A stretch of DNA of 64,000 bases, taken from Macrostomum lignano (taxonomy: Eukaryota). Positions 2,098 to 25,189 of the stretch are shown piece by piece. Under the pieces are notes generated by a model, which saw nothing but the letters and a program-made list of their open reading frames with translations, made no database searches and was not told the DNA's origin. Position 1 is the first letter of the stretch; every line of letters starts with the position of its first letter. Where the stretch lies: positions 186,001-250,000 of the forward strand of contig NIVC01000521.1 in assembly GCA_002269645.1 (NCBI GenBank), given 5' to 3'. The translations under genes and the position numbers were made by a program.

Positions 2098-5000
2098 GGA
2101 CAGACAGACGAATGGCATGCAAGTTGCACATACATGCATTTATATTTGTATCCTTGATCTACTGTAATGGTTTTCTCGCAACCTGGTTTGAAATGGTATA
2201 AAGCAACTCAGGTGTCTCCAAAATTCATCTAATTAACTCATCGAAACCGCCAGGGAGCTGCTTCGCGCGCTAAAAATAGCCAACAGTCTGCACACTCACA
2301 TTGTCGGCATCATGGAGCCGCGCTACGATCGGGTCTGTCAGCGCAGCGACGAGCACGAGGCCTGCCCCCGGTCGGTCAAATTGAATAATCGGCGCCGATT
2401 GTCTCCGCAATTGCCATCAACTTCGTCGTCGTCGCTGGCGGCCGCTCAATTCGATCAGCTGATGCAGCCGGCGGTCAAACTGGCCAGACTGAAATGCGAC
2501 AACGGCGATGATCAGTCAATGCCGGCAGTTGCCAAGGTGGAGGCGTCCTCCGTTAGCGATCCTCCGACGACTGAGGATGCCGACGCGGCCGACAACGACG
2601 CCGCTGCCGACTATGGATTCGATGCGCCCGCGTCTGTCGATAACAACTTTCTAGATGACGATGACTGCCTTCTAATTGGCGAGGATTCCACTAGCGAGGG
2701 CATTCTTGGAATGTCTACTTCTTCTAGCACGGCTGCTGGCGCCGGACTGTCTCGGCGACGTCAGCGCCGGTTGCCCCGGCGAAGCTCCACGGCAGCGGCG
2801 GCGGCGACTACTGCCACGATGGGTGACGAAGATCAGTTGCCAGACAGCGGCGTGAGCGGCGCCGGCTCCTCCGCCCATCAGCCGGATGTGGGCGCGCTGT
2901 GCAAAAGCGCCATTCATTTGGCCTACAAAGAGATGAAAGGCGGCGGACCGCATCTGTTTGATTTCAGCATGCCGTGAGTTCATTTGAATTCGCCCCTCCC
3001 TCCAAACCCAGCGCCGCTGGAAATCGGCGCCCCTCCCTCCTTTAAATCCAGCGCACCTGGGAATCGGCGCCGCCCCTTCCTCCAAACCCAGCGCCCCGTG
3101 AAATCGGCGCCGCCCCTCCCTCCTCCAAACCCAGCGCCCCGTGAAATCGGCGCCGCCCCTCCCTCCTCCAAACCCAGCGCACCTGGGAATCGGCGCCGCC
3201 CCTCCCTCCTCCAAACCCAGCGCACCTGGGAATCGGCGCCGCCCCTTCCTCCAAACCCAGCGCCCCTGGAAATCGGCGCCGCCCCTCCCTCCTCCAAACC
3301 CAGCGCACCTGGGAATCGGCGCCGCCCCTCCCTCCTCCAAACCCAGCGCCCCTGGGAATCGGCGCCGCCCCTTCCTCCAAACCCAGCGCCCCTGGGAATC
3401 GGCGCCGCCCCTTCCTCCAAACCCAGCGCACCTGGAAATCGGCGCCGCCCCTTCCTCCAAACCCAGCGCCCCTGGGTATCGGCGCCGCCCCTTCCTCCAA
3501 ACCCAGCGCCCCTGGGAATCGGCGCCGCCCCTCTCTCCTCCAAACCCAGCGCCCCTGGGAATCGGCGCCGCCCCTCCCTCCTCCAAACCCGGCGCACCTG
3601 AGAATCGGCGCCGCCCCTTCCTCCAAACCCAGCGCCCCTGGAAATCGGCGCCCCTCCCTCCTCCAAACCCAGCGCACCTGGGAGTCGGCGCCCCTCCCTC
3701 CTCCAAACCCAGCGCACCTGGGAATCGGCGCCGCCCCTCCCTTTGCTTTTCCAAACCCAGCGCCCCTGGGAATCGGCGCCGCCCCTCCCTCCTCCAAACC
3801 CAGCGCCCCTGGGAATCGGCGCCGCCCCTCTCTCCTCCAAACCCAGCGCCCCTGGGAATCGGCGCCGCCCCTCTCTCCTCCAAATAGAACGCCCCTAGGA
3901 ATCGGCGCCGCCCCTCCCTCCTCCAAATAGAACGCCCCTAGGAATCGGCGCCGCCTCCCCCCCCCCTTAGACAGCGCCCCTAGGAATCGGTGCCTATTGA
4001 AAACGCCGCGAAAGTATGATGATCATTTGTGTAAAAATATACTTCCCAATATCACTAATACGTATTAGCTACATTCTTTTATTGCAACAAGCAATTTTTA
4101 TTTGATGCTACGTGAGGCCCAGGCTCGATTCCAAGTGCTGGGGCTAAATTGGAGTCTTGGTTTGGGTCTGCTCTGCTTGTGGGTCCAGCCCCAAGGAGCA
4201 GTGAAGTTTGCATGCCTAACGATAAGTTCAGGCCAGGGTGCACACAGCCCCTGTCTATAACAGAAAATAACCAACTGATTCTTTGAACTTTTTAAAAAAA
4301 TTGCAGATTCAGCGACCCGGTGAATTTCGCAACGGCTGAACAGGTGATCGCCAGGGCTATGCAACTGCAGCCGGGTTTGGAAGTGTCTACAGACTTCTGG
4401 TGGAGTGAGAATGCGCATCTAACTGTTTTTATTGCTTTTTTTAATTGTGTATTTTCTGTATATTTAGCTGCTAGTCTCTCTGTCTCTCTCCTTGTGGTTT
4501 TTAAATAATTTATTTTCTGCCATGTTTGTCAACTTATATGATTGGTTGATAAAATCAATTGGCTAATTATGATATTTAATTATCTAATTAACGGCTAGAC
4601 GTAAATAATACTGTCTATTCCTTATTACTAACTTGGCATTTTATAGGAAAAGTTTTCAGCTCCGCTGCAGTATGAGAGATGGAGAGAGTACAAAAAATTA
4701 ATCGAAAATTAAATTATTAAGTTGTCAATTAGCTCCACGTTGGGGTATAACTTGTGCGTTGGTAATTGCTAGTTAGAAATGTCAAGTGCTCACTGGGAAT
4801 TCATATATGAGCTGGTTGGTCAAGTGCTTGTGTGACATGCTCTGACACTAGAAAGCCGACTAGATGGGGATCGGTACGAGTTCGGTTATGTAACTACAGA
4901 GGGATCAACCAATCAGCTGAGTCGGTTAAACCCGTTGAAAAACGTTACCGTGACAAGAATCGCTACGAGTCACTGCAAACAAGTCACTGGTGACTTTGGC

Positions 5001-6909
5001 GCGGCTCTTGTGATTTTTTAACGACGCAAACAACTGTGATGCGGCGGTAAGGCGACTCTGGGTCACGAGCGCATCACTTGACTTGCAGAATCATAAAAGA
5101 CTAGAGTCGATAAAAAAGAGTCGTCCGAGAGTCGATTTAGCGTTTAATTGTGTGCTACCTGCAACGACTCTGGGGCAATGCAATTAACTCTGGGACGCTT
5201 CTAAGGTTTAATTTAGGATTTTAGGGTTAAAATTAATAGTCAGACCCGATTGATAAATCAACAAAGGAATAGGATTTTAGTGTAAGGGGTGTAGTACTAG
5301 CCTTGCAATGAAAGTTTACTGGGGACTCCAACCCTAGTCTCATCGTTAATTAAGTTATTAAAATTGATTAGAGCTCAAATTAGTGTACAGAAGTGTACTT
5401 TTTCAACGCGTTAAATTGCAATTTTTTCGCAGGCCAACTGTGCCCAGTTGAACTCAACCGGTTAGCCCGATCAGAGAAGCTCTGGCGTCAGCGACTCCTA
5501 ATGCGCCGATTGCGGTCCAAGGATAGCGTAGGTTGCCCTTTTTTCAAGTCTCAGCAAGGAGAGAGAAACAGGGATTTCTATAGTTATTTTATTATCAGTG
5601 CTCGATACTTCTTATTTTTTTATGTTACTTGTTACAGAATGGCTTGGTCGGCAGTATTCTATGGACAAGTATAACAGTACCGCAAAATTTCGGATGCGCA
5701 GGCACAGATACATGTGCAGGGTACGGGGGAATTTGAGTAGAGGGAGAGTTGATGGGATGTCTCCATGGTTTATAGATGCGATGATTGGGTGTCTTGCAAG
5801 TCAAGCACTTCTGAAGCTCCAATGACGGTACCTAACAGTCCTGAAGCTCCAATGACAGGGTACCTAACAGTCCTGAAGCTCCAATGACAGGGTACCTAAC
5901 AGTCCTGAAGCTCTAATGACAGGGTACCTAACAGTCCTGAAGCTCCAATGACAGGGTACCTAACAGTCCTGAAGCTCCAATGACAGGGTACCTAACAGTC
6001 CTGAAGCTCCAATGACAGGGTACCTAACAGTCCTGAAGCTCCAATGACAGGGTACCTAACAGTCCTGAAGCTCTAATGACAGGGTACCTAACAGTCCTGA
6101 AGCTCTAATGACAGGGTACCTAACAGTCCTGAAGCTCCAATGACAGGGTACCTAACAGTCCTGAAGCTCTAATGACAGGGTACCTAACAGTCCTGAAGCT
6201 CCAATGACAGGGTACCCGACAGTCCTGAAGCTCTAATGACAGGGTACCCGACAGTCCTGAAGCTCTATTGACAGGGTACCTAACAGTCCTGAAGCATCAA
6301 TGACAGGGTACCTAACAGTCCTGAAGCTCTAATGACAGGGTACCTAACAGTCCTGAAGCTCCAATGACAGGGTGCCCGACAGTCCTGAAGCTCCAATGAT
6401 ACAGGATGCCTGGCGACCTGGCTACCGACTGTCAATTGTTCCTCATTGCTGACCCTACCTGTATCTCGCATGCCCAGGTCTGCAGCCAACTCCTACCCAC
6501 CCAACCCTCGCAGAAGCTGACCCGCAGGCAGAAAAGCTTCGAACTCATCGCCGGCCGTCTGAGCACCGAAGATTTCGACAAATTCCGCGTCATTTTATCC
6601 CGGGATTACACATCGTCAGATGAGGAATTTGAAGATTGTTCCGCATCGGCAGCTGCCACTGCATCGGCTGGGGCGCCGCTTCGCGTCCGCGAGTTGCCCT
6701 GGGAGTCGGCAGAGATGGCGGAGATGAAGCGGCAGCTGGACACGGCTTACCTGGATAGCTGCGCCACAGCTAAACAGTCCGAACAGTTGCGCCGGGTTGC
6801 CCGCGGCACCGGCTGCCTGAGCGTCCGGCCGCCGCCAGCCGACTGTCCAGATTGGGCGATTCGACGCGAAACCGCTGATCCGGGCGACTTAGGCAACGCC
6901 GATTGTTAA
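1396..6909 (+). CDS. Gene A1, unnamed family (C14orf93/DUF4616-like C-terminal region, putative nuclear or DNA-binding protein), about 470 aa. Exons 1396-1505, 2254-2973, 4307-4404, [5433-5527 or 5638-5720], 6514-6909
   Basis: GT-AG boundaries join in frame. Peptides align with paralog A2: FSPLTLFE..TNAQML.ESMA.REL, GPHLFDFS.PF, KL.RRQ.SFEL...LST...KFRVIL.RDYTSSDEE, LRVRELPWES, RPPP...PDWA. Exon 3 is 98 nt in both paralogs. The family resemblance is recalled, not searched. Confidence 0.8.
1980..2110. repeat. (GACA)n/(GACAG)n microsatellite in A1 intron 1
   Basis: Direct reading. Confidence 0.95.
2985..3990. repeat. GC-rich minisatellite of about 40 nt in A1 intron 2
   Basis: ccaaacccagcgcccctgggaatcggcgccgcccctccctcct units. 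Confidence 0.95.
4477..4494 (+). promoter_or_regulatory. Putative A1 docking site (tctctgtctctctccttg), pairing with selector 5555-5574 (caaggagagagaaacaggga)
   Basis: 12 contiguous Watson-Crick pairs plus an extension after a 2-nt bulge; 73 nt after the A1 exon-3 donor, the same position as the A2 dock. Confidence 0.5.
4931..5130. repeat. Short interspersed repeat; second copy at 19879-20010
   Basis: cccgttgaaaa(a)cgttaccgtgacaagaatcgcta...gtca(c/t)tgcaaac shared by both loci. Confidence 0.7.
5433..5527 (+). CDS. A1 candidate alternative exon a (SQLCPVELNRLARSEKLWRQRLLMRRLRSKDS)
   Basis: ttttttcgcag|GC...AGC|gtaggt, 95 nt, phase 1 to 0, basic C-terminal half. Confidence 0.6.
5638..5720 (+). 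CDS. A1 candidate alternative exon b (KWLGRQYSMDKYNSTAKFRMRRHRYMCR)
   Basis: Long pyrimidine tract + ttacag|AA...AGG|gtacgg, 83 nt, phase 1 to 0. Confidence 0.55.
5810..6395. repeat. 32-nt minisatellite
   Basis: cctgaagctccaatgacagggtacctaacagt. Confidence 0.95.
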
Positions 6910-9321: not shown

Positions 9322-12300
9322 ATGGCAGCCTGCGAGTCGGCTGCGCCGCCATTCTCGCCTCTGACTCTATTCGAGTCGACAATTACCAACGCCCAGATGC
9401 TACTGGAGTCCATGGCCGAACGAGAACTGTTCACCGCTATGCGCATTGTCGCCTGTCTGCATTCCCAGATGCTGCAAGTGATGGAGCCACGGTTTGGCCG
9501 ACTGTGCGATCGAAGCGATCAGCTGGGCCTGCTGATTGACTCTGACCCATCCGCTGCTGGCCGGAGCTCTGGGCAGCAGCAGCAACAGCAGCAACCGGGT
9601 CAGACCTCTAATCAGCAGCAACAGCAGCTGCAGGGCAGTCAGCAGCATCGAACCAAGGCTGATCCAGATGCCGGCGACGGAGTTCTTGGCGCTGCCCTGT
9701 GCGCCATCAAGGTAACTTGATTAATCAGTAGAATTACCACGGGAAATGAAATAAAAAACTGAAGCTTTTTATCGCGACTAGGCAGACATTAGAAACTGCA
9801 CACTCAGTCATGCTTTAAAGCCATTAGGCGGACATTAGAAACTGCACACTCAGTCATGCTTTAGAGCCATTAGGCGGACATTAGAAACTGCACACTCAGT
9901 CATGCTTTAGAGCCATTAGGCGGACATTAGAAACTGCACACTCAGTCATGCTTTAGAGCCATTAGGCGGACATTAGAAACTGCACACTCAGTCATGCTTT
10001 AGAGCCATTAGGCGGACATTAGAAACTGCACACTCAGTCATGCTTTAAAGCCATTAGGCGGACATTAGAAACTGCACACTCAGTCATGCTTTAGAGCCAT
10101 TAGGCGGACATTAGAAACTGCACACAGTCATGCTTTAGAGCCATTAGGCGGACATTAGAAACTGCACACTCAGTCATGCTTTAAAGCCATTAGGCGGACA
10201 TTAGAAACTGCACACAGTCATGCTTTAGAGCCATTAGGCGGACATTAGAAACTGCACACTCAGTCATGCTTTAGAGCCATTAGGCGGACATTAGAAACTG
10301 CACACTCAGTCATGCTTTAGAGCCATTAGGCAGATATTAGAAACTGCACACTCAGTCATGCTTTAAAGCCATTAGGCGGACATTAGAAACTGCACACAGT
10401 CATGCTTTAGAGCCATTAGGCGGACATTAGAAACTGCACACTCAGTCATGCTTTAGAGCCATTAGGCGGACATTAGAAACTGCACACTCAGTCATGCTTT
10501 AGAGCCATTAGGCAGACATTAGAAACTGCACACTCAGTCATGCTTTAAAGCCATTAGGCGGACATTAGAAACTGCACACTCAGTCATGCTTTAAAGCCAT
10601 TAGGCGGACATTAGAAACTGCACACTCAGTCATGCTTTAGAGCCATTAGGCGGACATTAGAAACTGCACACTCAGTCATGCTTTAAAGCCATTAGGCGGA
10701 CATTAGAAACTGCACACTCAGTCATGCTTTAAAGCCATTAGGCGGACATTAGAAACTGCACACTTAGTCATGCTTTAGAGCCATTAGGCGGACATTAGAA
10801 ACTGCACACTCAGTCATGCTTTAAAGCCATTAGGCGGACATTAGAAACTGCACACTCAGTCATGCTTTAGAGCCATTAGGCAGATATTAGAAACTGCACA
10901 CTCAGTCATGCTTTAAAGCCATTAGGCGGATATTAGAAACTGCGCACTCAGTCATGCTTTAAAGCCATTAGGCGGCTGTATGAAAAATCTCCCCCTTTCC
11001 AGGCGGACCCGGATGATTCAACCCGCCGATCCCTGCGCCCCCTGGCCGACTCCACCGCCGCAGTCGCCGCTGGCGCCACCCCCGAGGACGCCGACGATGA
11101 AGAGGAACTGGAAGAAGAACTCGAAGAGGAAGACGAAGAGTGCGTCATCATGGCTGCCACAGCTGCCGAGGAGGCCGAGTTTGCAGCGTCGACTGCCTAC
11201 GGCGGCTATCATCATTCCCAGCATCCCCAGCTTCATCATCCGCAGCAGCAGCAGCCCGTTCCCAAGATTGCCCGCTACGATTTCTCATTAGGCGCCTCCT
11301 CGTCGGCCTCCTCCCTAGCCGCCATTGGTGGCGACGTGCCAGCCGAGTGTAAAACTGTGATGCGCCGGGCCTACAAAGCTTTGAAAGGCGCCGGGCCGCA
11401 TCTGTTCGATTTTAGTCAGCCGTGAGTGTCCGTCCGGTTTGAAATTTAATGCCATAATACCCAACTGTCTTCAGGGTTTTTGTATTTCTTCGAAACCGCA
11501 AGTCTCGTGTGTTTCCTGAAAACAACTAGTCTCGTGTTTTCTTGGAAACTGCTAGTCTCGTGTTTCCTGGAAACCGCAAGTCTCGTGTGTTTCCTGGAAA
11601 CCGCAAATCTCCTGGGTTTCCTGGAAACCGCCAGTCTCCTGTGTTTCCTGGAAACCGCCAGTCTACTATGTTTCCTGGAAACCGCTAGTCTCCTGTTTCC
11701 TGGAAACCGCTAGTCTCCTGTTTCCTGGAAACCGCTAGTCTACTGTGTTTCCTGGAAACCGCTAGTCTCGTGTTTTTCTCAGTCTTATATTTTCTTGGAA
11801 ACCTTTAGTCTCATGTGGTTCTTGGAAACCCCTGGTGTCATGTTTCTCAGAAACGGCTTGTCTCATGTTTATTGGAACTGTCTCATGTTTATTGGAACTG
11901 TCTCATGTTTATTGGAACTGGCTCGTTTGTTTCCTGGAAACCGCTAGTCATGTGTTTCCTGGAAACCAGTAGTCTCGTGCGTTTTCCAGTTTCATATTTT
12001 TTGAAAACCTCTATAAGTTTAAAATTCTTCAATGAACCATTAAAAATGTAGAAACTCCCGTGTATACTCCTTAATTAATATATTCATGCACATTTTCGAA
12101 CCCTTGCCGCCGCAGTTTCGGAGCCGATGTCAATCAGCGAGTTGCCGCCCAGGTGATGACCAAAGCCAAGGAGTTGGCCATAGGCAAGGGCTGGCCAGAT
12201 GACATCTGGCAAAGTGAGTGTCGCTAATATTTGTTATTCAATTTGCTTACTACTATTAGTAGCATATCCATTGTGTTTTAACAATTGTCCTGGAAACGTC

Positions 12301-12628
12301 GCAAGTTCTCACCTTTTTATAGTCACTTGTGTCTCATTCTTTCACCAATTGTCCCACTTGGTCATATCTGCACTTTTCATGCCTACCTGTAACGCTCTTG
12401 TGCGTTGTTGTTCGTTAAAAGGTTTTCAAATTATTCGTTCTCTCAAAACAACGCGATATGCTGTCAATTTTGCAGCGCATTTGTCATTTACAGTGGCATT
12501 GACTTGTATGATCATTAATTATCTAATTAACTGATAACTATAGGAATCTCTGCTATGGCTAACTTTCATATAAATTTGAATTGATAAGCCCGTTTTTATT
12601 AGACCTTCAACATGGGTGTAGATAGATG

Positions 12629-12660
<32 letters not shown>

Positions 12661-12727
12661 TATAGATAGTTAGATAGATAGATAGTTAGATAGATAGATA
12701 GATATATAGACAAATAGAAAGATAGAC

Positions 12728-12796
<69 letters not shown>

Positions 12797-12831
12797 GATA
12801 GATAGAAAGATAGATAAATAGAAAGATAGAC

Positions 12832-12924
<93 letters not shown>

Positions 12925-12959
12925 GATAGATAGAAAGATAGATAAATAGAAAGATAGAC

Positions 12960-13026
<67 letters not shown>

Positions 13027-13042
13027 CAGATAGATAGATAGA

Positions 13043-13091
<49 letters not shown>

Positions 13092-16000
13092 CAGATAGAT
13101 AGATAGAATAGATAGATAGATTCATAGAAAGCTAGATAGACAGACAGACAGATACATGGTCATGGTATTGTCACAGATAATTGCCGTATAAATGCAGTAA
13201 ACTCAACGTCGCACACCAGAGCGAGCCACGAGCGAATCCAGTGTACTTAGCTGGCCCAGTGCAAATGCTTTAAAAGTTAAATGCCGGCCTCTTCCAACTG
13301 CCCTTGCAATTGTCCCTTTCTCTTTGCTATCTCCAACTGTTAAAACAGGCTTGCCAAAGAGGAGCAGACTAGACATGATCTTCCTCACCTTTAAGCACAA
13401 TAATAAGCAGCGAAGTAAATTGTTCGTAAGTCCGCTCGATCTGCTTTTGTCTGTTGCGCGGGTAAAACTGCTTTTTTTGACCAGCAACAATTTTTTGCTC
13501 CAGAATCTTGATTTGCAATAGGCAATTTTGGTTTTGATCTTGTTTTCTTGTCGGCCTCGTGGGGCGACGATGTAAGTTTTTAATTGGTAGCTAATTGCTC
13601 AGGTAGTTTTATTTCGTAGGTAATTGCTCAGGTAGTTTTAATTGGTAGATAATTGCTCAAGTAGTTTTAATTGGTAGCTAATTGCTCAGGTAGTTTTAAT
13701 TGGTAGCTAATTGCTCAGGTAGTTTTATTTGGTAGATAATTGCTCCAGTAGTTTTAATTGGTAGCTAATGGCTCAGGTAGTTTTAATTGGTAGATAATTG
13801 CTCAGGTAGTTTTAATTGGTAGCTAATTGCTCCGGTAGATTTATTTGGTAGATAATTGCTCCAGTAGTTTTAATTGGTAGCTAATTGCTCAGGTAGTTTT
13901 AATTGGTAGCTAATTGCTCAGGTAGTTTTATTTGGTAGATAATTGCTCCCGTAGTTTTAATTGGTAGCTAATTGCTCAGGTAGTTTTAATTGGTAGATAA
14001 TTGCTCAGGTAGTTTTATTGTCCTTGTTTTAATTCGAGTCTAAGTTAGTTACTTATCTATAGAAGCTTGTGACGTTTCTTTAATTAATTTATAATTAATT
14101 AGATAGTTAGTAAGACCAATAAGGCAAAACGGAAGGTAAACTCGCCGTTAAACTTGCAGGCCTACCGCCTGTGTGCCGTTTGTCGACTGTATTCTCTAAA
14201 TTGCGATTCGATATTCGACGGAATTATAAATTTAACGTAAGATTAATTAGGATTCAAAGCAGGGAAGATTTTCGTAATTTCCAGTCTTGAATAAACATTG
14301 TTTTAATTCTTTATTATTTTATATTTTAATTGTTTCTCCAAGCATTAATTGCTTACAACTTGTGACGTTTCAAATCAGTTCCTGTCGAAAAAGTTCCGCA
14401 TTTTAAAATGATTAACAATAATTTTTTCTATGCAATGTTTTTTCTAGGAATTGCCTACAAATATCGTATAGATGGCATTTTTAGTCATTTTCGGACCAAG
14501 GCCAAGTCTAAATATCGGGAAATCGTAAGCCAAAATAATGCGCCTCTGCTACTACTCACAACTACAACTACAACTACGTGTGTTGCGTGTACTTTTGTGT
14601 TACATTGTAAACGGCGTTTATTTGATGCTCGCCGTGTCTAAATCATAGGGTTGAGATTAAGGCATGTTTAAAATCATAACGGTGAGATTAAGCCATATTT
14701 GAAATCATAGAGGTGAGATTAAGCTGTGGCCAAGTATTGGGATGAGATTAAGCCATGTTTGAAATCATAGGGTGAGATTAAGCTGTGGCCAAGTATTGGG
14801 ATGAGATTAAGCCATGTTTGAAATCATAGGGTGAGATTAAGCTGTGGCCAAGTATTGGGATGAGATTAAGCCATATTTGAAATCATAGGGTTGATATTAA
14901 GCTGTGGCCAAGTATTGGGATGAGATTAAGCCATGTTTGATATCATAGGGGTGAGATTAAGCTGTGGCCAAGTATTGGGATGTGATTAAGCCATGTTTGA
15001 AATCATAGGGGTGAGATTAAGCTGTGGCCAAGTATTGGGATGAGATTAAGCCATATTTGAAATCATAGGGGTGAGATTAAGCTGTGGCCAAGTATTGGGA
15101 TGTGATTAAGCCATGTTTGATATTATAGGGTGAGATTAGGGCATGTTTAAAATCATAAGGGGTGAGATTAAGTCATATTTGAAATCATAGGGGTGAGATT
15201 AAGCTGTGGCCAAGTATTGGAATGAGATTAAGCCATGTTTGAAATCATAGGGGTGAGATTAAGCTGTGGCCAAGTATTGGGATGTGATTAAGCCATGTTT
15301 GAAATCATAGGGTGAGATTAAGCTGTGGCCAAGTATTGGGATGTGATTAAGCCATGTTTGAAATCATAGGGTTGATATTAAGCTGTGGCCAAGTATTGGG
15401 ATGTGATTAAGCCATGTTTGAAATCATAGGGTTGATATTAAGCTGTGGCCAAGTATTGGGATGTGATTAAGCCATGTTTGAAATCATAGGGTTGATATTA
15501 AGCTGTGGCCAAGTATTGGAATGAGATTAAGCCATGTTTGAAATCATAGGGTTGATATTAAGCTGTGGCCAAGTATTGGAATGAGATTAAGCCATGTTTG
15601 AAATCATAGGGGTGATATTAAGCTGTGGCCAAGTATTGGGATGTGATTAAGCCATGTTTGAAATCATAGGGGTGAGATTAAGCTGTGACCAAGTATTGGG
15701 ATGTGATTAAGCCATATTTGAAATCATAGGGTGAGATTAAGCTGTGACCAAGTATTGGGATGTGATTAAGCCATATTTGAAATCATAGGGTGAGATTAAG
15801 CTGTGACCAAGTATTGGGATGTGATTAAGCCATATTTGAAATCATAGGGGTGAGATTAAGCTGTGGCCAAGTATTGGGATGTGATTAAGCCATATTTGAA
15901 ATCATAGGGGTGAGATTAAGCTCTGACCAATTATTGGGATGTGATTAAGCCATGTTTAAAATCATAGGGTGAGATTAAGCTGTGTTCAATCACACGGATA

Positions 16001-18319
16001 GGATCAGGCCTTGTCTTAATCCTTAGGGTTAGATTAAGCTGTGCCCAAATAGAGTGAGATTAAGCCATGCTTGAATAATTGGGATGAGATTAAGCTTTAT
16101 TATTTTTTTTCTGAAAAGTCTCCGACCGTGAAGGTGGGATTGCTGGACGAGCTGGCTGGCAGATCCAACTGCAATTTGCGACGTTTTCAAGAGCCAGTCC
16201 GAAATCCAAGAATTCCCTAATTAATCTCCTATTCAACGTATTTTCAGAGATGCCCTACACATCAAAAATAGTTTACTTATTTTCAAATTTTCGCGCTAAA
16301 ATGCGCATCAAACTGAGGAACTCTGTAAGCTAATGATGTCATGCAAGTTGTTTTTTTATTTCTAGAAAAATCTCCAATCTCCTACTGACAGTAGAGTCAT
16401 AAAGACACGGAGAACTCGCGCTCGTTTTTTGAGACAGTGAAATATGTACTATTATGTAATTAATAGTAATATATGTACTGTTGCTTTGCAATCAATTTAT
16501 ACAAAATCTCGTAGGACTTCCTTGCGACAGTCGGATAAAATATTTGCACGCAAATTTTGGCGTGAAAATTCGCGCTAGACACAAGCAGAAAGTGAGTATA
16601 CTTATTAGAGCGATATGGACAGTTCAATGGTCCGAGCGAGACTGAGTGTGAGCGGGAGGGAGACTGAGTGTGAGCGGGAGGGAGACTGAGTGTGAGCGGG
16701 AGGGAGACTGAGTGTGAGCGGGAGGGAGACTGAGTGTGAGCGGGAGGGAGACTGAGTGTGAGCGGGAGGGAGACTGAGTGTGAGCGGGAGGGAGACTGAG
16801 TGTGAGCGGGAGGGAGACTGAGGGCGAGAGGGAGACTGAGGGCGAGAGGGAGACTTGAGGACGAAAGGAAGAGGGGTATTGAAATGCATATTAAAGGTGA
16901 GGATAATAATAGTCAAGAGGAAGACAGAGAAATGAGGGAGAGATGGTAAGTGAAATGGGTTTTATTAATAAAGAGTCCCACAAGACAAACCGTTGAGTCG
17001 GTCAGAAGCGGCCGTACAGTCTTATCCAAGCTGATGGTGGTCCTAACCTGCTCATTGCCAAACTAACCGAAGAATCGCTATTCGCTTCCTCACAACTGCC
17101 ACAGAAGCTCAGCCGTCGCCAGCGCAGCTTCGAACTGGTTGCCACCAGCCTCAGCACTGACGAATTGGAGAAATTCCGGGTTATTCTCACCCGGGATTAC
17201 ACCAGCTCGGATGAGGAGTGCGGCTCCGGCGGCTCCGACCAGCTGCGGGTGCGCGAGCTGCCTTGGGAGTCTGATGAGGTAAACTATGCGCTATTTAGGT
17301 CTTTGTGTCTGCTCTGTAGGTCTTTGTGTCTGCTCTGTAGGTCTTTGTGCCTGCTCTGTAGGTCTCTGAGCCTGCTCTGTAGGTCCTTGTGCCTGCTCTA
17401 TAGGTCTTTGTGCCTGCTCTGTAGGGTCTTTGTGCCTGCTCTGTAGGTCTTTGTGCCTGCTCTGTAGGTCTGAGCCTGCTATGTTGGTCTTTGTGCCTGC
17501 TCTGTAGGTCTTTGAGCCTGCTCTGTAGGTCCTTGTGCCTGCTCTATAGGTCTTTGTGCCTGCTCTGTAGGGTCTTTGTGCCTGCTCTGTAGGTCTTTGT
17601 GCCTGCTCTGTAGGTCTGAGCCTGCTATGTTGGTCTTTGTGCCTGCTCTGTAGGTCTTTGAGCCTACTCTGTAGGTCTTTGTGGCTGCTCTGTAGGTCTT
17701 TGAGCCTGCTCTATAGGTCTTTGTGGCTGCTCTGTAGGGTCTTTGTGCCTGCTCTATAGGTCTTTGTGGCTGCTCTGTAGGTCTTTTTGTCTGCTATGTA
17801 GGTCTTTGTGCCTGCTCTGTAGGTCTTTGAGCCTGCTATGTAGGTCTTTGTGCCTGCTCTGTAGGTCTTTGAGCCTGCTATGTAGGTCTTTTTGCCTGCT
17901 CTGTAGGTCCTTCTCTGTGTCTGCTATTAGGTCTTTGTCTGTGTCTGCTCTAGAGGTCTTTGTGCGTCTGCTCTGTAGGTCCCTGTCTGTTGGTCTATTC
18001 TCTAGCTTTTCCCTCCGTTCGTCAGTATCTGTATGTTAGTCAGTGTTTTTCTATTGATATTTACATGTCCATATTTTGTCTGACCACATCCTAATCATAA
18101 TCCTAATCCCGGCAGGTAAAGCGGCTGAAGCGCCAGCTGGACCAGGTGTACGCCGACAACTGCGCCACTACCAAGCAGCGCCAGCAGCTGGCCAAGAGTA
18201 TCAGAGACCCGATGCGGGCCAGGTCGCAGCGCCCGCCGCCTGAGGGCGCGCCAGACTGGGCATTGAAACCCGCGCCGTCCTCGCCAACTGGCGCCTCGGC
18301 ATCGGGAGCGCGTCGTTAA
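9322..18319 (+). CDS. Gene A2, tandem paralog of A1, 453 aa. Exons 9322-9711, 11003-11421, 12116-12213, one of five 77-nt alternative exons, 17105-17278, 18116-18319
   Basis: In-frame GT-AG splicing and strong peptide similarity to A1 at both termini. The linker is acidic and Gln/His-rich with KxDP-type motifs. TAA stop at 18317-18319. Confidence 0.85.
9780..10975. repeat. 46-nt minisatellite filling the first coding intron of A2, about 26 copies
   Basis: ggcggacattagaaactgcacactcagtcatgctttagagccatta. Confidence 0.95.
11485..11990. repeat. Minisatellite of about 27 nt in A2 intron 2, carrying TTCCTGGAA GAS motifs
   Basis: tttcctggaaaccgctagtctc units; about 15 TTC-N3-GAA sites. Confidence 0.9.
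12288..12310 (+). promoter_or_regulatory. Putative splicing docking site for the A2 exon cassette (tcctggaaacgtcgcaagttctc)
   Basis: Its reverse complement matches sequences upstream of E2-E5; the core begins about 80 nt after the exon-3 donor. Confidence 0.75.
12618..13155. repeat. (GATA)n microsatellite between the dock and E1
   Basis: Direct reading. Confidence 0.97.
13349..13425 (+). CDS. A2 alternative exon E1 (SLPKRSRLDMIFLTFKHNNKQRSKLF)
   Basis: 77 nt, acag|GC...TTC|gtaagt, phase 1 to 0, open in frame with exons 12116-12213 and 17105. Confidence 0.85.
13575..14020. repeat. 29-nt minisatellite between E1 and E2
   Basis: ggtagttttaattggtagctaattgctca. Confidence 0.95.
14065..14078 (+). 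promoter_or_regulatory. Putative selector for E2 (gcttgtgacgtttc)
   Basis: 14 bp with dock 12293-12306 including two G-U pairs; ends about 80 nt before E2. Confidence 0.75.
14160..14236 (+). CDS. A2 alternative exon E2 (SLPPVCRLSTVFSKLRFDIRRNYKFN)
   Basis: 77 nt, ttgcag|GC...AAC|gtaaga, phase 1 to 0, homologous to E1. Confidence 0.85.
14357..14371 (+). promoter_or_regulatory. Putative selector for E3 (aacttgtgacgtttc)
   Basis: 15 bp with dock 12293-12307 including one G-U pair; ends about 75 nt before E3. Confidence 0.78.
14448..14524 (+). CDS. A2 alternative exon E3 (RIAYKYRIDGIFSHFRTKAKSKYREI)
   Basis: 77 nt, tttctag|GA...ATC|gtaagc, phase 1 to 0. Confidence 0.85.
14640..16095. repeat. 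60-nt minisatellite (two 30-nt halves) between E3 and E4
   Basis: gaaatcataggggtgagattaagctgtggccaagtattgggatgtgattaagccatgttt. Confidence 0.95.
16173..16189 (+). promoter_or_regulatory. Putative selector for E4 (aatttgcgacgttttca)
   Basis: 17 bp with dock 12291-12307 including two G-U pairs; ends about 60 nt before E4. Confidence 0.78.
16248..16324 (+). CDS. A2 alternative exon E4 (KMPYTSKIVYLFSNFRAKMRIKLRNS)
   Basis: 77 nt, ttttcag|AG...TCT|gtaagc, phase 1 to 0. Confidence 0.85.
16410..16430 (+). promoter_or_regulatory. Putative weaker selector for E5 (gagaactcgcgctcgtttttt)
   Basis: Imperfect complement of the dock (gagaact 7 bp, gcg, cgttt plus G-U pairs); ends about 85 nt before E5. 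Confidence 0.55.
16515..16591 (+). CDS. A2 alternative exon E5 (RLPCDSRIKYLHANFGVKIRARHKQK)
   Basis: 77 nt, ctcgtag|GA...AAA|gtgagt, phase 1 to 0. Confidence 0.85.
16635..16855. repeat. 22-nt minisatellite after E5
   Basis: gagactgagtgtgagcgggagg. Confidence 0.95.
17295..17990. repeat. 21-nt minisatellite in the last A2 intron
   Basis: gtaggtctttgtgcctgctct. Confidence 0.95.
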
Positions 18320-19749: not shown

Positions 19750-22700
19750 ATGTCTGCGGAGAATCGATTGAGTCAAGTGCTGCAGCTGTGCGAGCATGAC
19801 CGCAATATTCTAGAAGTGAGGATCCAGATGAATCTACTACTATTATAGACATTTTCATCATACTCGTATTCAACCTATCCCGTTGAAAACGTTACCGTGA
19901 CAAGAATCGCTAAATAGTCATTGCAAACAGCTCACTAGTGACTCTGGTGTGAATCCTGTGACTAAGAGTCGTAAAAGAGTTATCCAAGAGTCGTTGGGTT
20001 TGCGCCTAACTGTCTACTGATTCAAGTAGTCTAAATAGAGTTGTTAAAAATGAGAACTGCGATTCTAATTCATAAAGTGACGATTCATAAAGGATGGGCG
20101 TTCCATGGTGGAAGTCATCGCAATTACCAAGAGTCATGTGTCTACGAGTATATTTCGTTATGTAGGTTCCGTTCTACTTTCGGTTGTGTCTATATTGCGT
20201 TATGTAGGTTCAGTTCCACTTCCGGTTGTGTCTATATTGCGTTATGTAGGTTCAGTTCCACTTCCGTTTGTGTCTATATTGCGTTATGTAGGTTCAGTTC
20301 CACTTCCGGTTGTGTCTATATTGCGTTATGTAGGTTCAGATCCACTTCCGGTTGTGTCTATATTGCGTTATGTAGGTTCAGTTCCACTTCCGGTTGTGTC
20401 TATATTGCGTTATGTAGGTTCAGTTCCACTTCCGGTTGTGTCTATATTGCTATCAATAGGTTTGGTGACACCTCTGGTTGCGTCTATACTGCTCTCAATA
20501 GGTTTGGTGGCACTTCCGGTTGTATCTATATTGCGTCATGTAGGTTCAGTTCTACTTCCGGTTGTGTCTACGAGTATATTACGTTATGTAGGTTCAGTTT
20601 CACTTCCGGTTTTGTCTATATTGCATCATGTATAGTAGGTTCAGTTCAACTTCCGGTTGTGTCTATATTGCATCATTTAGGTTCAGTTCCACTTCCGGTT
20701 GTATCTATATTGCGCCATGTAGGTTCAGTTCTACCTCCGGATATATATCTACCATATCTTTGGTATGTATATATATATACGAGTATATATGGTTGTGTCT
20801 ATTGTGTCTATTGCTCCCAGTATATATAGTAGACACAATACAATATATTCTAGAGAGAGATCCATCTAGAATATAAGCATCATTTAGGTTCAGTTCAACT
20901 ACCGGTTATGTCTATATTGCGCCATGTAGATGCAGTTCCACTTCCGGTTTTTCAACTTTTATTTCTAATATAACCTGTAATTGCTATTTACATAGTAGCT
21001 CCCTACCATAAGTAAAATGGTTCAGGATAAGCCTTAATTTCCTAACTTTACTTAGTGAAAGCGTCCAAATGTTTTGCAATCGAGTGGCGATCTTCCAACT
21101 CCCCTGCCAGGAGCTGCGCTCGCTGTACAACTCTCTATGGAACGGCTTCCTGACGCTGAAATTCCGTCGCATCGTGGATCCCGTTGTACTGCGCCACCTT
21201 CGCTACCTGACCGAGGTGGACTGCGCCAATGCGCAAAACGACTGCATCCAGCGTGCCTATGAGTTTCTCAACGAGGTCTGCCAGGCTGTCAGCGACAGCT
21301 ATGACTCGGATATTCGTAGCGCCGGGGCCAGCGAGATGGCTATGACGCTTGAGGATGAGAAAATGGCCGAGCTGTCCGTGCTGAAGGCTAAGTAAGCTAA
21401 AGTTGCGGATGTACTTTCGGTTTCACTTCCGGTTGTGTCGATATTGATCCCAGTAGGTTTGATTCTACTTCCGGTTGTGTCGATATTGATCCTAGTAGGT
21501 TTGGTTCCACTTCTTTTTGTGTCGATATTGATCCTAGTAGGTTTGGTTCCACTTCCGGTTGTGTCTATATTGATCCCAGTAGGTTTGATTCTACTTCCGG
21601 TTGTGTCGATATTGATCCTAGTAGGTTTGGTTCCACTTCTTTTTGTGTCGATATTGATCCTAGTAGGTTTGGTTCCACTTCCGGTTGTGTCGATATTGAT
21701 CCTAGTAGGTTTGGTTCTACTTCCGGTTGTGTCGATATTGATCCTAGTAGGTTTGGTTCCACTTCTTTTTGTGTCGATATTGATCCTAGTAGGTTTGGCT
21801 CAACTTCCGGTTGTGTCTATATTGATCCCAGTAGGTTGGGTTCCACTTCCGGTTGTGTCTATATTGATCCCAGTAGGTTGGGTTCCACTTCCGGTTGTGT
21901 GTGTCTATTTGTCTCCAAGGGGTTTATTTCCGATTGTGTCTAAATTACCATAATCTCACTTTCGATTAGCTTGAATCCGTTAATGCTGAATCTGATCCTA
22001 CTGATCGATCCCCATGAATCGCAAATGCCAGATTCGAGAAAGAGCCGCACGAGCTGGTCCGGCTGATGCAGGCCTGCCTGATGGAGGAGAGCCGCCTGCT
22101 GGCCAGGACTGCCGCTGCTGAGTCACAGGGGCCGGCCAGCGGTGTGAGTGGCCGGCTGCCGCTTGGTTGCATGTCTCTCTCTGTCACTCTGTCAGTCTGT
22201 CTGTCTGTCTGTTTGTCTGTCTCACATGCCAGTGCATCCCTCCAATCGGCAGGCTGCCCCGAAGCGGCCATCCTCCTCAGACTCCGCACTGCTGGACGCG
22301 GCTCTCGACACCAACCGGAAGCTTCGCCGCCTAGCCGTGGACCAGCAGCAGCAGCCGGCCCCGGACCCGGCCAGCCTGGAGGCGGAGCTGCGCAGCCAGC
22401 ACGAGGCTCTGGTTGGTCAGCTGAACAGCCGGGAGTCGCTGATCAACAGCCCCAGCAGCGGCCGGGACTCCGACAGGCTGGGCCGCGAGCTGTCCTGCGT
22501 GCTGGACTCGCTGCTCCGGCTGTACGAGGCCAACCCGCTGCCGCGCCTCGCAGCCATGGCCGGCGACCTGCTAACAAGGAGTCTGCTGATCCTGACTCAG
22601 GACGACCAGGTCATCAAGCAGAGGAAGTCCAATTATTGTCTGAGTCTGCGCTATTTGGCTGGCGACTTTCTCCAGCCCGACCGTCTGTACGAGTTTAAGG

Positions 22701-25020: not shown

Positions 25021-25189
25021 CAGCGGGGTTGGCTGGGTGTCGGGTGGAATTGACGGGCTGTGGGAAATTAAGAACCAATTTGATGTCAGGTGAAACCATT
25101 GGGTGTCAGGAGTGCCAGAAGTACAGGGCTTGTCGGATGGGCAAAAGAATAAGATGTGATGTCAGGGACAGGTGAGGTGTCCGGGGGGA

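What the first reader, a model, noticed from the sequence alone, without database searches (positions are those of the whole stretch)
12288..16430. Docking-site/selector RNA base-pairing that could choose among the A2 exons
Seen in sequence: one element shortly after the exon-3 donor (12288-12310) is complementary to sequences about 60-85 nt upstream of E2 (14065, 14 bp), E3 (14357, 15 bp), E4 (16173, 17 bp) and, less perfectly, E5 (16410). All selector deviations in E2-E4 are wobble-compatible (G-U), as expected for selection on RNA pairing. The E2-E3 and E4-E5 introns (about 210 and 190 nt) are too long for steric exclusion, so another mechanism is needed. Established knowledge: competing docking/selector duplexes drive Dscam1 exon-6 choice. 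Inference: this may be an independent instance outside arthropods. E1 has no clear selector and may be the default.
Basis: partly seen in the sequence, partly recalled or inferred. Interest (0 to 1): 0.92.

Follow-up and report, generated by a model that had tools for sequence, protein, structure and literature searches.

The report
Flatworm docking-site/selector exon-choice system
A gene of the flatworm Macrostomum lignano carries five interchangeable 77-base exons and one conserved intron element that can base-pair with a matching site in front of four of them, the design that picks one exon at a time in insect Dscam1 and that I did not find described in any flatworm.

Summary

**The gene.** The window is Macrostomum lignano (Platyhelminthes), contig NIVC01000521.1. 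The gene belongs to an uncharacterised family with no Pfam domain. It has five homologous 77-nt exons between two constitutive exons. Including exactly one keeps the reading frame. Skipping all of them, or including any two, gives a premature stop.

**The dock.** A 24-nt element lies 75 nt after the exon-3 donor. It forms 15-17 bp uninterrupted helices (Watson-Crick plus G-U) with sites 58-81 nt upstream of E2, E3 and E4. It forms an interrupted -26 kcal/mol duplex with a site upstream of E5. These are the only four sites at or below -20 kcal/mol in the 4.8-kb region. E1 has no selector.

**The paralogs.** Two paralogous genes elsewhere in the genome carry 14 and 7 such exons.
- They hold the identical 17-nt dock core, CTGGAAACGTCGCAAGT, in otherwise unalignable introns.
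- This core supplies the only non-repetitive intronic 10-mers shared by all three clusters.
- About 9 of 14 and 6-7 of 7 of their exons have a selector, mostly 58-90 nt upstream of the acceptor.
- A paralog with a single such exon has no dock.

**Limits.** Transcript-based models each use one variable exon. Compensatory change is only modest, and no RNA or mutational test was possible.

**Verdict.** A new member of the Dscam1 exon-6 type mechanism, evolved independently.

The parts
12116..12213 (+). Constitutive exon 3 (98 nt), donor AAA|GTGAGT. It ends with 1 nt of a split codon.
   Evidence: It encodes FGADVNQRVAAQVMTKAKELAIGKGWPDDIWQ, as in the annotated protein P0176 / PAA81625.1.
12287..12310 (+). 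Docking site. The conserved core CTGGAAACGTCGCAAGT is at 12290-12306, about 75 nt downstream of the exon-3 donor.
   Evidence: The core is identical in paralogs L004 (12391) and L005 (11887), with unrelated flanks. It supplies the only non-repetitive intronic 10-mers shared by the three clusters. An all-against-all helix scan picks it as the element with the most partners upstream of exons.
13349..13425 (+). Variable exon E1 (77 nt; LPKRSRLDMIFLTFKHNNKQRSKLF). It has no selector and is a possible default exon.
   Evidence: Its best duplex with the dock is -16.2 kcal/mol, equal to the background mean.
14064..14079 (+). Selector for E2 (AGCTTGTGACGTTTCT), 81 nt upstream of the acceptor.
   Evidence: 16-bp helix with dock 12292-12307, 13 Watson-Crick plus 3 G-U. 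-24.5 kcal/mol.
14160..14236 (+). Variable exon E2 (77 nt; LPPVCRLSTVFSKLRFDIRRNYKFN).
14357..14371 (+). Selector for E3 (AACTTGTGACGTTTC), 77 nt upstream of the acceptor.
   Evidence: 15-bp helix, 14 Watson-Crick plus 1 G-U. -23.1 kcal/mol. The orthologous selector is retained in the B-type paralog (L004 E5, CTTGTGACGTTTCTA).
14448..14524 (+). Variable exon E3 (77 nt; IAYKYRIDGIFSHFRTKAKSKYREI). This is the exon used in the annotated mRNA models.
   Evidence: P0176 (this contig) and P0004 (near-identical copy) read ...IWQ-R-IAYKYRIDGIFSHFRTKAKSKYREI-KLSRRQ.
16173..16189 (+). Selector for E4 (AATTTGCGACGTTTTCA), 59 nt upstream of the acceptor.
   Evidence: 17-bp helix, 15 Watson-Crick plus 2 G-U. 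-25.1 kcal/mol. Orthologous selectors are found in L004 E6 and L005 E1.
16248..16324 (+). Variable exon E4 (77 nt; MPYTSKIVYLFSNFRAKMRIKLRNS).
16409..16437 (+). Selector for E5 (GGAGAACTCGCGCTCGTTTTTTGAGACAG). The duplex is interrupted and reaches into the A2-specific flanks of the dock. It ends 78 nt upstream of the acceptor.
   Evidence: -26.1 kcal/mol with dock 12286-12311. It is one of only four sites at or below -20 kcal/mol in the region.
16515..16591 (+). Variable exon E5 (77 nt; LPCDSRIKYLHANFGVKIRARHKQK).
   Evidence: Its ortholog in the B-type gene (E7) is the sole variable exon in protein P0005.
17105..17278 (+). Downstream constitutive exon (KLSRRQRSFELVATSL...WESDE), phase 0, donor GTAAAC.
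   Evidence: The junction ...KYREI|KLSRRQ is seen in P0176 and P0004.

Best explanation
This is a cluster of mutually exclusive exons governed by competing RNA duplexes, of the Dscam1 exon-6 type.

**Proposed mechanism.**
- One docking site lies in the intron just after constitutive exon 3. It can pair with only one of several selector sequences at a time.
- Each selector sits about 60-90 nt upstream of the 3' splice site of a variable exon.
- The duplex that forms loops out the variable exons lying between dock and selector. It brings the exon-3 donor next to the acceptor just downstream of that selector, so that exon is joined to exon 3.
- Only one duplex can exist per pre-mRNA, so one exon is chosen.
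- Mistakes are disarmed by the reading frame. The exons are 77 nt, so skipping all of them or including two gives a premature stop.
- E1, the first exon, has no selector. It is probably the default when no duplex forms.

**Shown here.** The exon array and its frame logic. The complementarity, and that it is more than chance. The exclusive conservation of the dock across three paralogous genes. The position of selectors upstream of most variable exons. The absence of the dock from paralogs that lack an array.

**Inferred.** That the duplexes form in vivo. That pairing activates rather than represses the downstream exon. How the variable exons beyond the chosen one are kept out (in Dscam1 a repressor does this). 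That the choice has a biological purpose. The host protein has no known function, and the variable part is a 25-residue basic segment.
For: **1. Complementarity beyond chance in the window.** The four best sites are exactly the four selector positions.

**2. An unbiased scan finds the dock.** An all-against-all helix scan picks the dock as the element with the most partners upstream of exons, both in the window and independently in paralog L004.

**3. Dock conservation.** The 17-nt core is identical in the A2 gene (window), the B-type gene (L004, L003) and the C-type gene (L005). It lies 76, 437 and 229 nt from the donor respectively, and the flanks are unrelated. The paralogs differ at 35-43% of fourfold-degenerate sites. 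It supplies the only non-low-complexity intronic 10-mers common to the three clusters.

**4. Selectors in the paralogs.**
- L004: E1-E3 and E5-E10 give -21.6 to -27.8 kcal/mol, 58-88 nt from the acceptor. Control windows have a mean of -14.4.
- L005: E2-E7 give -19.2 to -30.5 kcal/mol, 59-117 nt upstream. Control mean -13.2.
- Positional enrichment has p = 0.006, 5e-5 and 8e-5 in the three genes.

**5. Selectors slide along the dock.** L004 E1-E3 use GCGTTTCCAGA, which pairs with the dock's 5' half. E5-E8 use CTTGCGACGTTT, which pairs with its 3' half.

**6. Intron flanks are otherwise unalignable.** Upstream of E2-E5, only the selector aligns.

**7. Natural negative controls.**
- The D-type paralog (L006) has one 77-nt exon, introns of 93 and 84 nt, and no dock.
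- The A1-type gene in the window has no array and no dock core.

**8. Frame logic.** Every single inclusion is in frame. Skipping and all ten double inclusions give a premature stop.

**9. Transcript-derived models.**
- P0176 and P0004 use E3 only.
- P0179 uses B-type E9 only, and P0005 uses B-type E7 only.
- P0177 joins exon 3 directly to the downstream constitutive exon, is frameshifted, and stops after 18 codons.

**10. Strand-specific and co-variation signals (modest).**
- Isolated internal mismatches: 11 wobble-preserving transitions against 2 disruptive ones.
- Selectors fit their own paralog's dock flanks slightly better: mean -1.8 kcal/mol, better in 13 of 19.
- Covariation score 0.147 against 0.127 in shuffles, reached by 7 of 500 shuffles.
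Against: - **No RNA data.** Mutual exclusivity rests on five annotated models and the frame logic. P0005 is a UniRef entry of unstated basis. Other UniRef predictions for these genes string several cluster exons together (P0001, P0010, P0012, P0183). They look like ab initio artefacts but were not disproved.
- **One genome only.** All comparisons are between paralogs of a single genome. No ortholog from another species was available.
- **Little true compensatory change.** The dock core does not vary, so it cannot show covariation. Covariation is confined to the flanks and is weak. The own-dock test used a filter that favours the result.
- **The wobble excess is not significant over all positions.** Over the whole 23 nt it is 44 against 22, where roughly 13 to 10 is expected from composition. 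AT-rich introns favour C-to-T changes anyway.
- **Exons without a selector.** Window E1, and L004 E0, E4 and E11-E13, have none. No second dock was found for them.
- **A competing signal.** With flanks and loops allowed, the units of a 60-nt minisatellite pair with the dock region about as strongly as the selectors do.
- **Direction of effect untested.** Whether pairing activates or represses the downstream exon is not known.
Confidence: 0.72

Rival explanations
1. The selectors are a relic of tandem exon duplication. On this view they are leftover copies of one ancestral intron segment carried along with each duplicated exon. Their complementarity to the element after exon 3 is a coincidence, or comes from one ancient inverted duplication with no present function.
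For: The variable exons clearly arose by tandem duplication. Tandem duplication is a published route to selector-like repeats (PMC6071210). Several selectors share the same core, GACGTTTCC.
Against: - The exons themselves are only about 40-50% identical, and the intron flanks cannot be aligned apart from the selector.
- The dock is identical over 17 nt in three paralogs that differ at 35-43% of fourfold-degenerate sites. It is the only intron sequence they share.
- Selectors cover different parts of the dock rather than repeating one motif.
- Paralogs without an exon array have no dock.
Confidence: 0.05
2. The motif is a binding site for a protein rather than an RNA-RNA pairing element. The factor would be either a double-stranded-DNA-binding factor, which is indifferent to orientation, or an RNA-binding splicing regulator. 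It would mark the variable exons and the intron after exon 3.
For: The central part (GACGTTTCC and its complement GGAAACGTC) is very constant across selectors. This is also what a sequence-specific binding site would look like. No structure probing exists.
Against: - A single-stranded-RNA-binding protein would not recognise the reverse complement. Yet the dock is always antisense to the selectors, and there is always exactly one per gene.
- Selectors slide along the dock by up to about 10 nt, so they do not share one fixed motif.
- Internal mismatches favour the transitions that keep G-U pairs on the transcribed strand, 11 against 2. A DNA-level site predicts no such asymmetry.
- Selectors reach into the paralog-specific dock flanks and match their own gene's version somewhat better.
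Confidence: 0.07
3. The duplexes form, but they do something other than one-of-many choice. For example, they might only help splice a long, repeat-filled intron by bridging its ends, or bias use towards distal exons. Exclusivity would then come from another mechanism, or simply from nonsense-mediated decay of out-of-frame products.
For: - The frame logic alone can give apparent exclusivity.
- Several exons have no selector.
- The introns carry large minisatellites, which make the distances long.
- In Dscam1, dock deletion does not abolish inclusion of all exon-6 variants (statement in PMC4691838).
Against: - A single dock facing many overlapping selectors is inherently competitive.
- Selectors sit at a constant short distance upstream of individual acceptors, not at the intron ends.
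- Short inter-exon introns of 116-211 nt also carry selectors, and no bridging is needed there.
Confidence: 0.14

Closest known systems
Dscam1 exon 6 cluster of insects and crustaceans (docking site and selector sequences; Graveley 2005, May et al. 2011, as summarised in PMC11802352 and PMC8791459)
   Same: - One docking site lies in the intron directly downstream of the preceding constitutive exon.
- One selector lies upstream of each variable exon.
- Selectors are complementary to overlapping parts of the dock, so only one duplex can form.
- The dock is the most conserved intron element.
- The variable exons are tandem duplicates of equal length.
   Different: - The host gene is unrelated: no Ig or FN3 domains, no Pfam hit at all. 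The phylum is different (Platyhelminthes).
- The array is much smaller: 5, 7 and 14 exons, against 48 in Drosophila.
- The dock is shorter: about 24 nt with a 17-nt core.
- The exons are 77 nt, so errors shift the frame.
- The first exon, and some distal exons, have no selector.
- The same dock core is shared by three paralogous genes.
- There is no functional test.
Drosophila 14-3-3 xi, Mhc and srp clusters (Yang et al. 2011; Yue et al. 2016, PMC4691838)
   Same: Small clusters of 2-5 mutually exclusive exons controlled by competing intronic pairings. These show that the principle is not confined to Dscam.
   Different: - All of those are arthropod genes.
- Their docks are often downstream of the cluster, within it, or doubled.
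- Here there is a single upstream dock serving up to about 10 selectors.
Mammalian ATE1 exons 7a/7b (PMC7797038) and DNM1 (Suyama 2013, cited in PMC11802352)
   Same: Competing RNA structures that direct mutually exclusive exons outside arthropods. The general mechanism is therefore already known in other phyla.
   Different: - Those are two-exon switches in which two elements compete for a third. They are not one-dock, many-selector arrays.
- They have been tested experimentally. This system has not.

Membership tests
Docking-site/selector (competing RNA duplex) mutually exclusive exon clusters, Dscam1 exon-6 type | A tandem array of homologous alternative exons of equal length and phase lies between two constitutive exons. 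| tested here: met
   There are five 77-nt exons with AG...GT borders and homologous 25-residue peptides. The paralogs have 14 and 7.
Docking-site/selector (competing RNA duplex) mutually exclusive exon clusters, Dscam1 exon-6 type | Exactly one variable exon is present per mature mRNA. | tested here: inconclusive
   Annotated models carry a single variable exon each: P0176 and P0004 (E3), P0179 (B-type E9), P0005 (B-type E7). P0177 skips all of them and is frameshifted. Only single inclusion keeps the frame. No RNA-seq junction data could be examined.
Docking-site/selector (competing RNA duplex) mutually exclusive exon clusters, Dscam1 exon-6 type | A single docking site lies in the intron next to the flanking constitutive exon and is conserved among homologous genes. 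| tested here: met
   The 17-nt core is identical in three paralog types, with unrelated flanks. It is the only intronic sequence they share. It is absent from paralogs without an array. The conservation was tested among paralogs of one genome, not among species.
Docking-site/selector (competing RNA duplex) mutually exclusive exon clusters, Dscam1 exon-6 type | Each variable exon has an adjacent selector. All selectors are complementary to overlapping parts of the one dock. | tested here: met
   Selectors were found for 4 of 5 exons in the window, about 9 of 14 in L004 and 6-7 of 7 in L005, mostly 55-90 nt upstream of the acceptor. Exons without one: window E1, and L004 E0, E4 and E11-E13.
Docking-site/selector (competing RNA duplex) mutually exclusive exon clusters, Dscam1 exon-6 type | Pairing is maintained in evolution by compensatory or wobble-compatible change. 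| tested here: inconclusive
   The dock core is invariant, so there is little room for covariation. Internal mismatches are 11 wobble-preserving against 2 disruptive transitions. The flanks co-vary weakly: covariation score 0.147 against 0.127, reached by 7 of 500 shuffles. Own dock is favoured over other paralogs' docks by 1.8 kcal/mol, but with a biased filter.
Docking-site/selector (competing RNA duplex) mutually exclusive exon clusters, Dscam1 exon-6 type | Disrupting the duplex changes exon choice, and compensatory mutation restores it. | not testable with these tools
   This needs minigenes, transgenic worms or antisense blocking.
Dscam (Ig-superfamily) genes, homology of the host gene | The protein has Ig and fibronectin type III domains homologous to Dscam. 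| tested here: not met
   There is no Pfam domain in the gene products or their relatives and no relative in the PDB. The family consists of uncharacterised proteins of M. lignano, with distant relatives in a sea star, an acorn worm and a mussel. The resemblance to Dscam is therefore one of mechanism only.

The most novel reading that the evidence does not exclude
A Dscam1-exon-6-like generator of isoform diversity, with one dock and many selectors, arose independently in flatworms.

- It sits in an uncharacterised protein family.
- Colinear orthologous exons and selectors in the three genes indicate that it predates the duplication that produced at least three genes.
- It now offers 5, 14 and 7 alternative versions of a 25-residue basic segment.
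- All three genes use an identical dock core. The evidence therefore does not exclude that selectors of one gene's pre-mRNA can pair in trans with the dock of another. That kind of interaction promotes trans-splicing in chelicerate sDscam (PMC9258826).

The probability below is for the first claim: functional, independently evolved and not previously described. The trans-pairing idea is much less likely.
Probability: 0.55. Interest if true: 0.82.

Novelty: new member of a known kind. Interest (0 to 1): 0.78.

Why it matters
- **Taxonomic reach.** One-dock, many-selector control of large mutually exclusive exon arrays has so far been described in arthropod genes. Outside arthropods only two-exon competing-structure switches are documented, in ATE1 and DNM1 (review PMC11802352; my searches found nothing for flatworms).
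- **Convergence.** A multi-selector system in a flatworm, in an unrelated gene, would show that this RNA-based device evolves repeatedly once exons duplicate in tandem. That is the idea put forward in PMC6071210.
- **A compact test bed.** The dock is about 24 nt, there are 4 selectors, and the cluster spans 5 kb. To my knowledge M. lignano can be made transgenic. Three paralogs with the same dock but different selector sets serve as natural variants.
- **The protein.** The finding also flags an uncharacterised metazoan protein family in which a short basic segment is deliberately diversified.

Tried and rejected
- **Total duplex energy with dock flanks and loops.** This was ambiguous because the units of the 60-nt minisatellite score as well as the selectors. 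I replaced it with uninterrupted-helix counts, core-only scans and shuffles.
- **Looking up P0001 and P0003 to get their loci.** Neither is on record. The paralog loci came instead from a second protein search.
- **Near-identical gene copies (L002 against the window, L003 against L004).** They are 97-100% identical, too close to say anything about compensatory change.
- **A second docking site for the exons without selectors (L004 E11-E13).** Only AT-rich chance helices turned up. I found no selector for window E1 or L004 E0.
- **Wobble asymmetry over all 23 aligned positions.** It was not significant once composition is considered. Only the isolated internal mismatches show a clear excess.
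- **Known RNA families.** Rfam has no match in 11400-17400 at E up to 0.1.
- **Function of the host protein.** No Pfam family, no PDB relative, and only 'uncharacterized' names for relatives.
- **The 17-bp helix at 60341.** It lies 48 kb downstream in unrelated sequence and is taken as chance background.
- **DNA-rearrangement reading.** I considered the inverted motif as a recombination site and rejected it. Recombination between inverted sites would invert the exons, all exons are co-oriented, and the G-U asymmetry points to the RNA level.
Full report
**Where the window comes from.** Proteins assembled from the exons around the finding match only Macrostomum lignano, a free-living flatworm. 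An exact look-up places the window on contig NIVC01000521.1 of assembly GCA_002269645.1. The window holds two tandem paralogous genes. I call them A1 (about 2237-6906) and A2 (9313 to about 18316). The finding lies in A2, annotated as BOX15_Mlig022797g2 (P0176).

**The host protein.** Neither gene product has a Pfam domain or a relative in the PDB. A profile search finds 255 relatives. Many are M. lignano paralogs. Distant relatives carry only 'uncharacterized' names in a sea star, an acorn worm and a freshwater mussel. The host gene is therefore unrelated to Dscam and its function is unknown.

**The exon array.**
- Exon 3 is 12116-12213, with donor GTGAGT.
- Five exons of exactly 77 nt follow: E1 13349-13425, E2 14160-14236, E3 14448-14524, E4 16248-16324 and E5 16515-16591.
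- Each is bordered by AG and GTAAG or GTGAG. Each encodes a related 25-residue basic peptide of the form LP..R....F..F...R....
- A profile of these peptides finds no further copy in the region.
- The next constitutive exon is 17105-17278.
- Because 77 is not a multiple of three, any single inclusion keeps the frame. Skipping all five, or including any two, gives a premature stop.
- The annotated models P0176 and P0004 contain E3 alone. P0177, from a third near-identical gene copy, joins exon 3 directly to the downstream constitutive exon and stops after 18 out-of-frame codons.

**Checking the observation.**
- The element at 12287-12310 forms uninterrupted helices (Watson-Crick plus G-U) of 16, 15 and 17 bp. 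The partner sites are 14064-14079, 14357-14371 and 16173-16189.
- It forms an interrupted duplex of -26.1 kcal/mol with 16409-16437.
- The selector ends lie 81, 77, 59 and 78 nt upstream of the acceptors of E2-E5.
- In the whole 64-kb window, the 16-mer complement with up to 3 mismatches occurs only at the dock and at the E2, E3 and E4 selectors. The shuffle expectation is 0.42.
- In 1000 dinucleotide shuffles of the intron, helices of 13 bp or more occur 0.1 times on average, and a helix of 15 bp or more occurs in 1.2% of shuffles.
Shuffles reach four sites 1.5% of the time.
- E1 has nothing better than background.
- One caveat: if the dock flanks are included and looped duplexes are allowed, the units of a 60-nt minisatellite in the E3-E4 intron score about -24 kcal/mol. 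This disappears with the conserved core alone.

**Paralogs are the strongest evidence.** A second protein search gave access to four more loci of the same genome. A sixth locus was fetched later.
- **L002** is a near-identical copy of the A2 gene. It is too similar to be informative.
- **L004** carries a 'B-type' paralog with 14 homologous variable exons, thirteen of 77 nt and one of 71 nt. The downstream gene of L003 is a near-identical copy of it, likewise too similar to be informative.
- **L005** carries a 'C-type' paralog with seven.
- **Divergence.** In the two constitutive exons that flank the cluster, these paralogs differ from A2 at 35-43% of fourfold-degenerate sites. Their introns cannot be aligned.
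- **Dock core.** All three nevertheless carry the identical 17-nt core CTGGAAACGTCGCAAGT in the intron after exon 3, at 76, 437 and 229 nt from the donor.
- **Unbiased k-mer comparison.** The only non-repetitive intronic 10-mers shared by the three clusters are the eight that tile this core.
- **Unbiased helix scan.** An all-against-all scan independently picks this element in L004 as the one with the most partners upstream of exons.

**Selectors in the paralogs.**
- In L004, E1-E3 and E5-E10 each have a complementary site of -21.6 to -27.8 kcal/mol, 58-88 nt upstream of the acceptor. Control windows of the same locus have a mean of -14.4.
- In L005, E2-E7 have sites of -19.2 to -30.5 kcal/mol, against a control mean of -13.2. 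E1 has a weaker site.
- Using only the invariant core, sites at or below -15 kcal/mol fall 30-140 nt upstream of an acceptor in 3 of 4, 10 of 14 and 6 of 6 cases. About 12-21% would be expected (p = 0.006, 5e-5 and 8e-5).
- The selectors are not copies of one motif. Some pair with the 5' half of the dock (GCGTTTCCAGA) and others with the 3' half (CTTGCGACGTTT). Selection for pairing predicts this pattern. It is the pattern described for Dscam1 exon 6.
- The variable exons and their selectors are colinear between genes. For example, A2 E3 corresponds to B-type E5. A2 E4 corresponds to B-type E6 and C-type E1. A2 E5 corresponds to B-type E7 and C-type E2. The dock-and-selector arrangement therefore predates the gene duplications. 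This step is my inference from peptide similarity.

**Natural negative controls.**
- A more distant paralog (L006, P0014) has a single 77-nt exon of this type, flanked by introns of 93 and 84 nt, and no dock.
- The A1 gene in the window has no such array and no dock core.
- The dock is therefore found where there is an array to choose from, and not elsewhere.

**Signals specific to RNA pairing.** These are present but modest.
- When selectors are aligned to the perfect complement by identity alone, isolated internal mismatches are 11 wobble-preserving transitions, 2 disruptive transitions and 8 transversions. Some of these are shared by descent.
- Over all 23 positions, the wobble excess is not significant once composition is taken into account.
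- On an alignment of 20 dock-selector pairs, 72% of cells pair, against 35-45% when the register is slid. The paralog-specific flanks show some changes on both sides: covariation score 0.147 against 0.127, reached by 7 of 500 shuffles.
- Selectors fit their own gene's dock 1.8 kcal/mol better on average, but my filter favoured that result.

**Mechanism.** The most likely mechanism is that of Dscam1 exon 6.
- The dock pairs with one selector at a time.
- The duplex loops out the proximal variable exons and brings the exon-3 donor next to the acceptor just downstream of the selector.
- That exon is then spliced in. The reading frame disposes of errors.
- Still inferred are in vivo pairing, the direction of the effect, and how the exons distal to the chosen one are excluded.
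- The exons without selectors (window E1; L004 E0, E4, E11-E13) are unexplained. The first exon of the array may be a default. No second dock was found.

**Comparison with what is known.**
- The architecture matches the Dscam1 exon-6 type point for point: an upstream dock, selectors upstream of each variant, and overlapping complementarity (PMC11802352).
- Competing structures also control small clusters in Drosophila 14-3-3 xi, Mhc and srp (PMC4691838), and two-exon switches in mammalian ATE1 and DNM1 (PMC7797038, PMC11802352).
- Four full-text searches found no report of docking or selector elements, or of mutually exclusive exon clusters, in Macrostomum or other flatworms. The library covers open-access papers only.
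- I file this as a new member of a known kind. It is the same mechanism in a new phylum and an unrelated gene, and it is untested experimentally.

**Verdict.** What remains is RNA-level and mutational proof.

Noticed in passing
window 11481-11778 and 11929-11966 (intron 2 of the same gene): A 27-nt minisatellite of about 11 copies. Each unit contains the near-palindrome GTTTCCTGGAAAC, which shares CCTGGAAAC with the 5' half of the dock and can pair with it (6 + 4 bp). It is present only in the A2 lineage (window and L002) and is absent from the B-type and C-type loci. It could be a decoy for the dock, or be related to the dock's origin.
   Followed up: partly
window 13205-13213, 12283-12291, 12346-12354 and about 13308: Same-orientation fragments of the dock recur upstream of E1, the exon with no selector. 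AACGTCGCA lies 136 nt upstream of E1. The dock's 5' flank CAATTGTCC recurs at about 12346 and about 13308. These may be relics of a dock duplication or weak secondary docks.
   Followed up: no
window 2237-6906 (upstream paralog A1; P0009 and P0002): The tandem upstream paralog uses a single 95-nt exon (5433-5527) at the equivalent position. It has a candidate alternative 83-nt exon (5638-5720). Both lengths are 2 mod 3, so this may be a two-exon mutually exclusive pair. There is no dock core. The arrangement of an A1-like gene followed by an A2-like gene recurs in L002, L003, L004 and L005.
   Followed up: partly
L004 12875-12945, 13851-13927 and 16702-18223: In the B-type paralog, several exons have no selector for the conserved dock. 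These are the first exon of the array (71 nt, not 77), E4, and the last three exons (E11-E13). No second dock was found for them.
   Followed up: partly
P0177 (PAA59491.1, a third near-identical copy of the gene, on another contig): An annotated transcript model joins exon 3 directly to the downstream constitutive exon. The product is frameshifted and ends after 18 codons (KAQPSPAQLRTGCHQPQH*). This shows that skipping of the whole cluster occurs, or was at least assembled.
   Followed up: yes
window 12619-13154, 13578-14017, 14686-16096, 16634-16852 and 17296-17981: The introns of the cluster are filled with tandem repeats: (TAGA)n x133, a 29-nt unit x15, a 60-nt unit x24, a 22-nt unit x10 and a 21-nt unit x32. 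These account for most of the long inter-exon distances. The 60-nt unit carries GGTGAGA, which is complementary to the A2-specific 3' flank of the dock.
   Followed up: partly
window about 21000-25100: A downstream gene has an SH2 domain (Pfam PF00017, E = 2.6e-5, ORF 24334-25017). The motif GFVEKAEAERLV...GAFLVRLSES resembles the STAT type; that resemblance is from memory and was not tested.
   Followed up: no
window 60341-60357: A 17-bp helix with the 3' part of the dock (AGGTGGGAACTTGTGAC) lies 48 kb downstream in unrelated sequence. I take it as the chance background rate of about one per 60 kb.
   Followed up: yes
L005 selectors of E3-E7 (13736-14934): Five C-type selectors share the same single mismatch opposite the dock U of GUCUGG (CCYG instead of CCAG). 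The mismatch is conserved, probably by inheritance from recent exon duplications.
   Followed up: no
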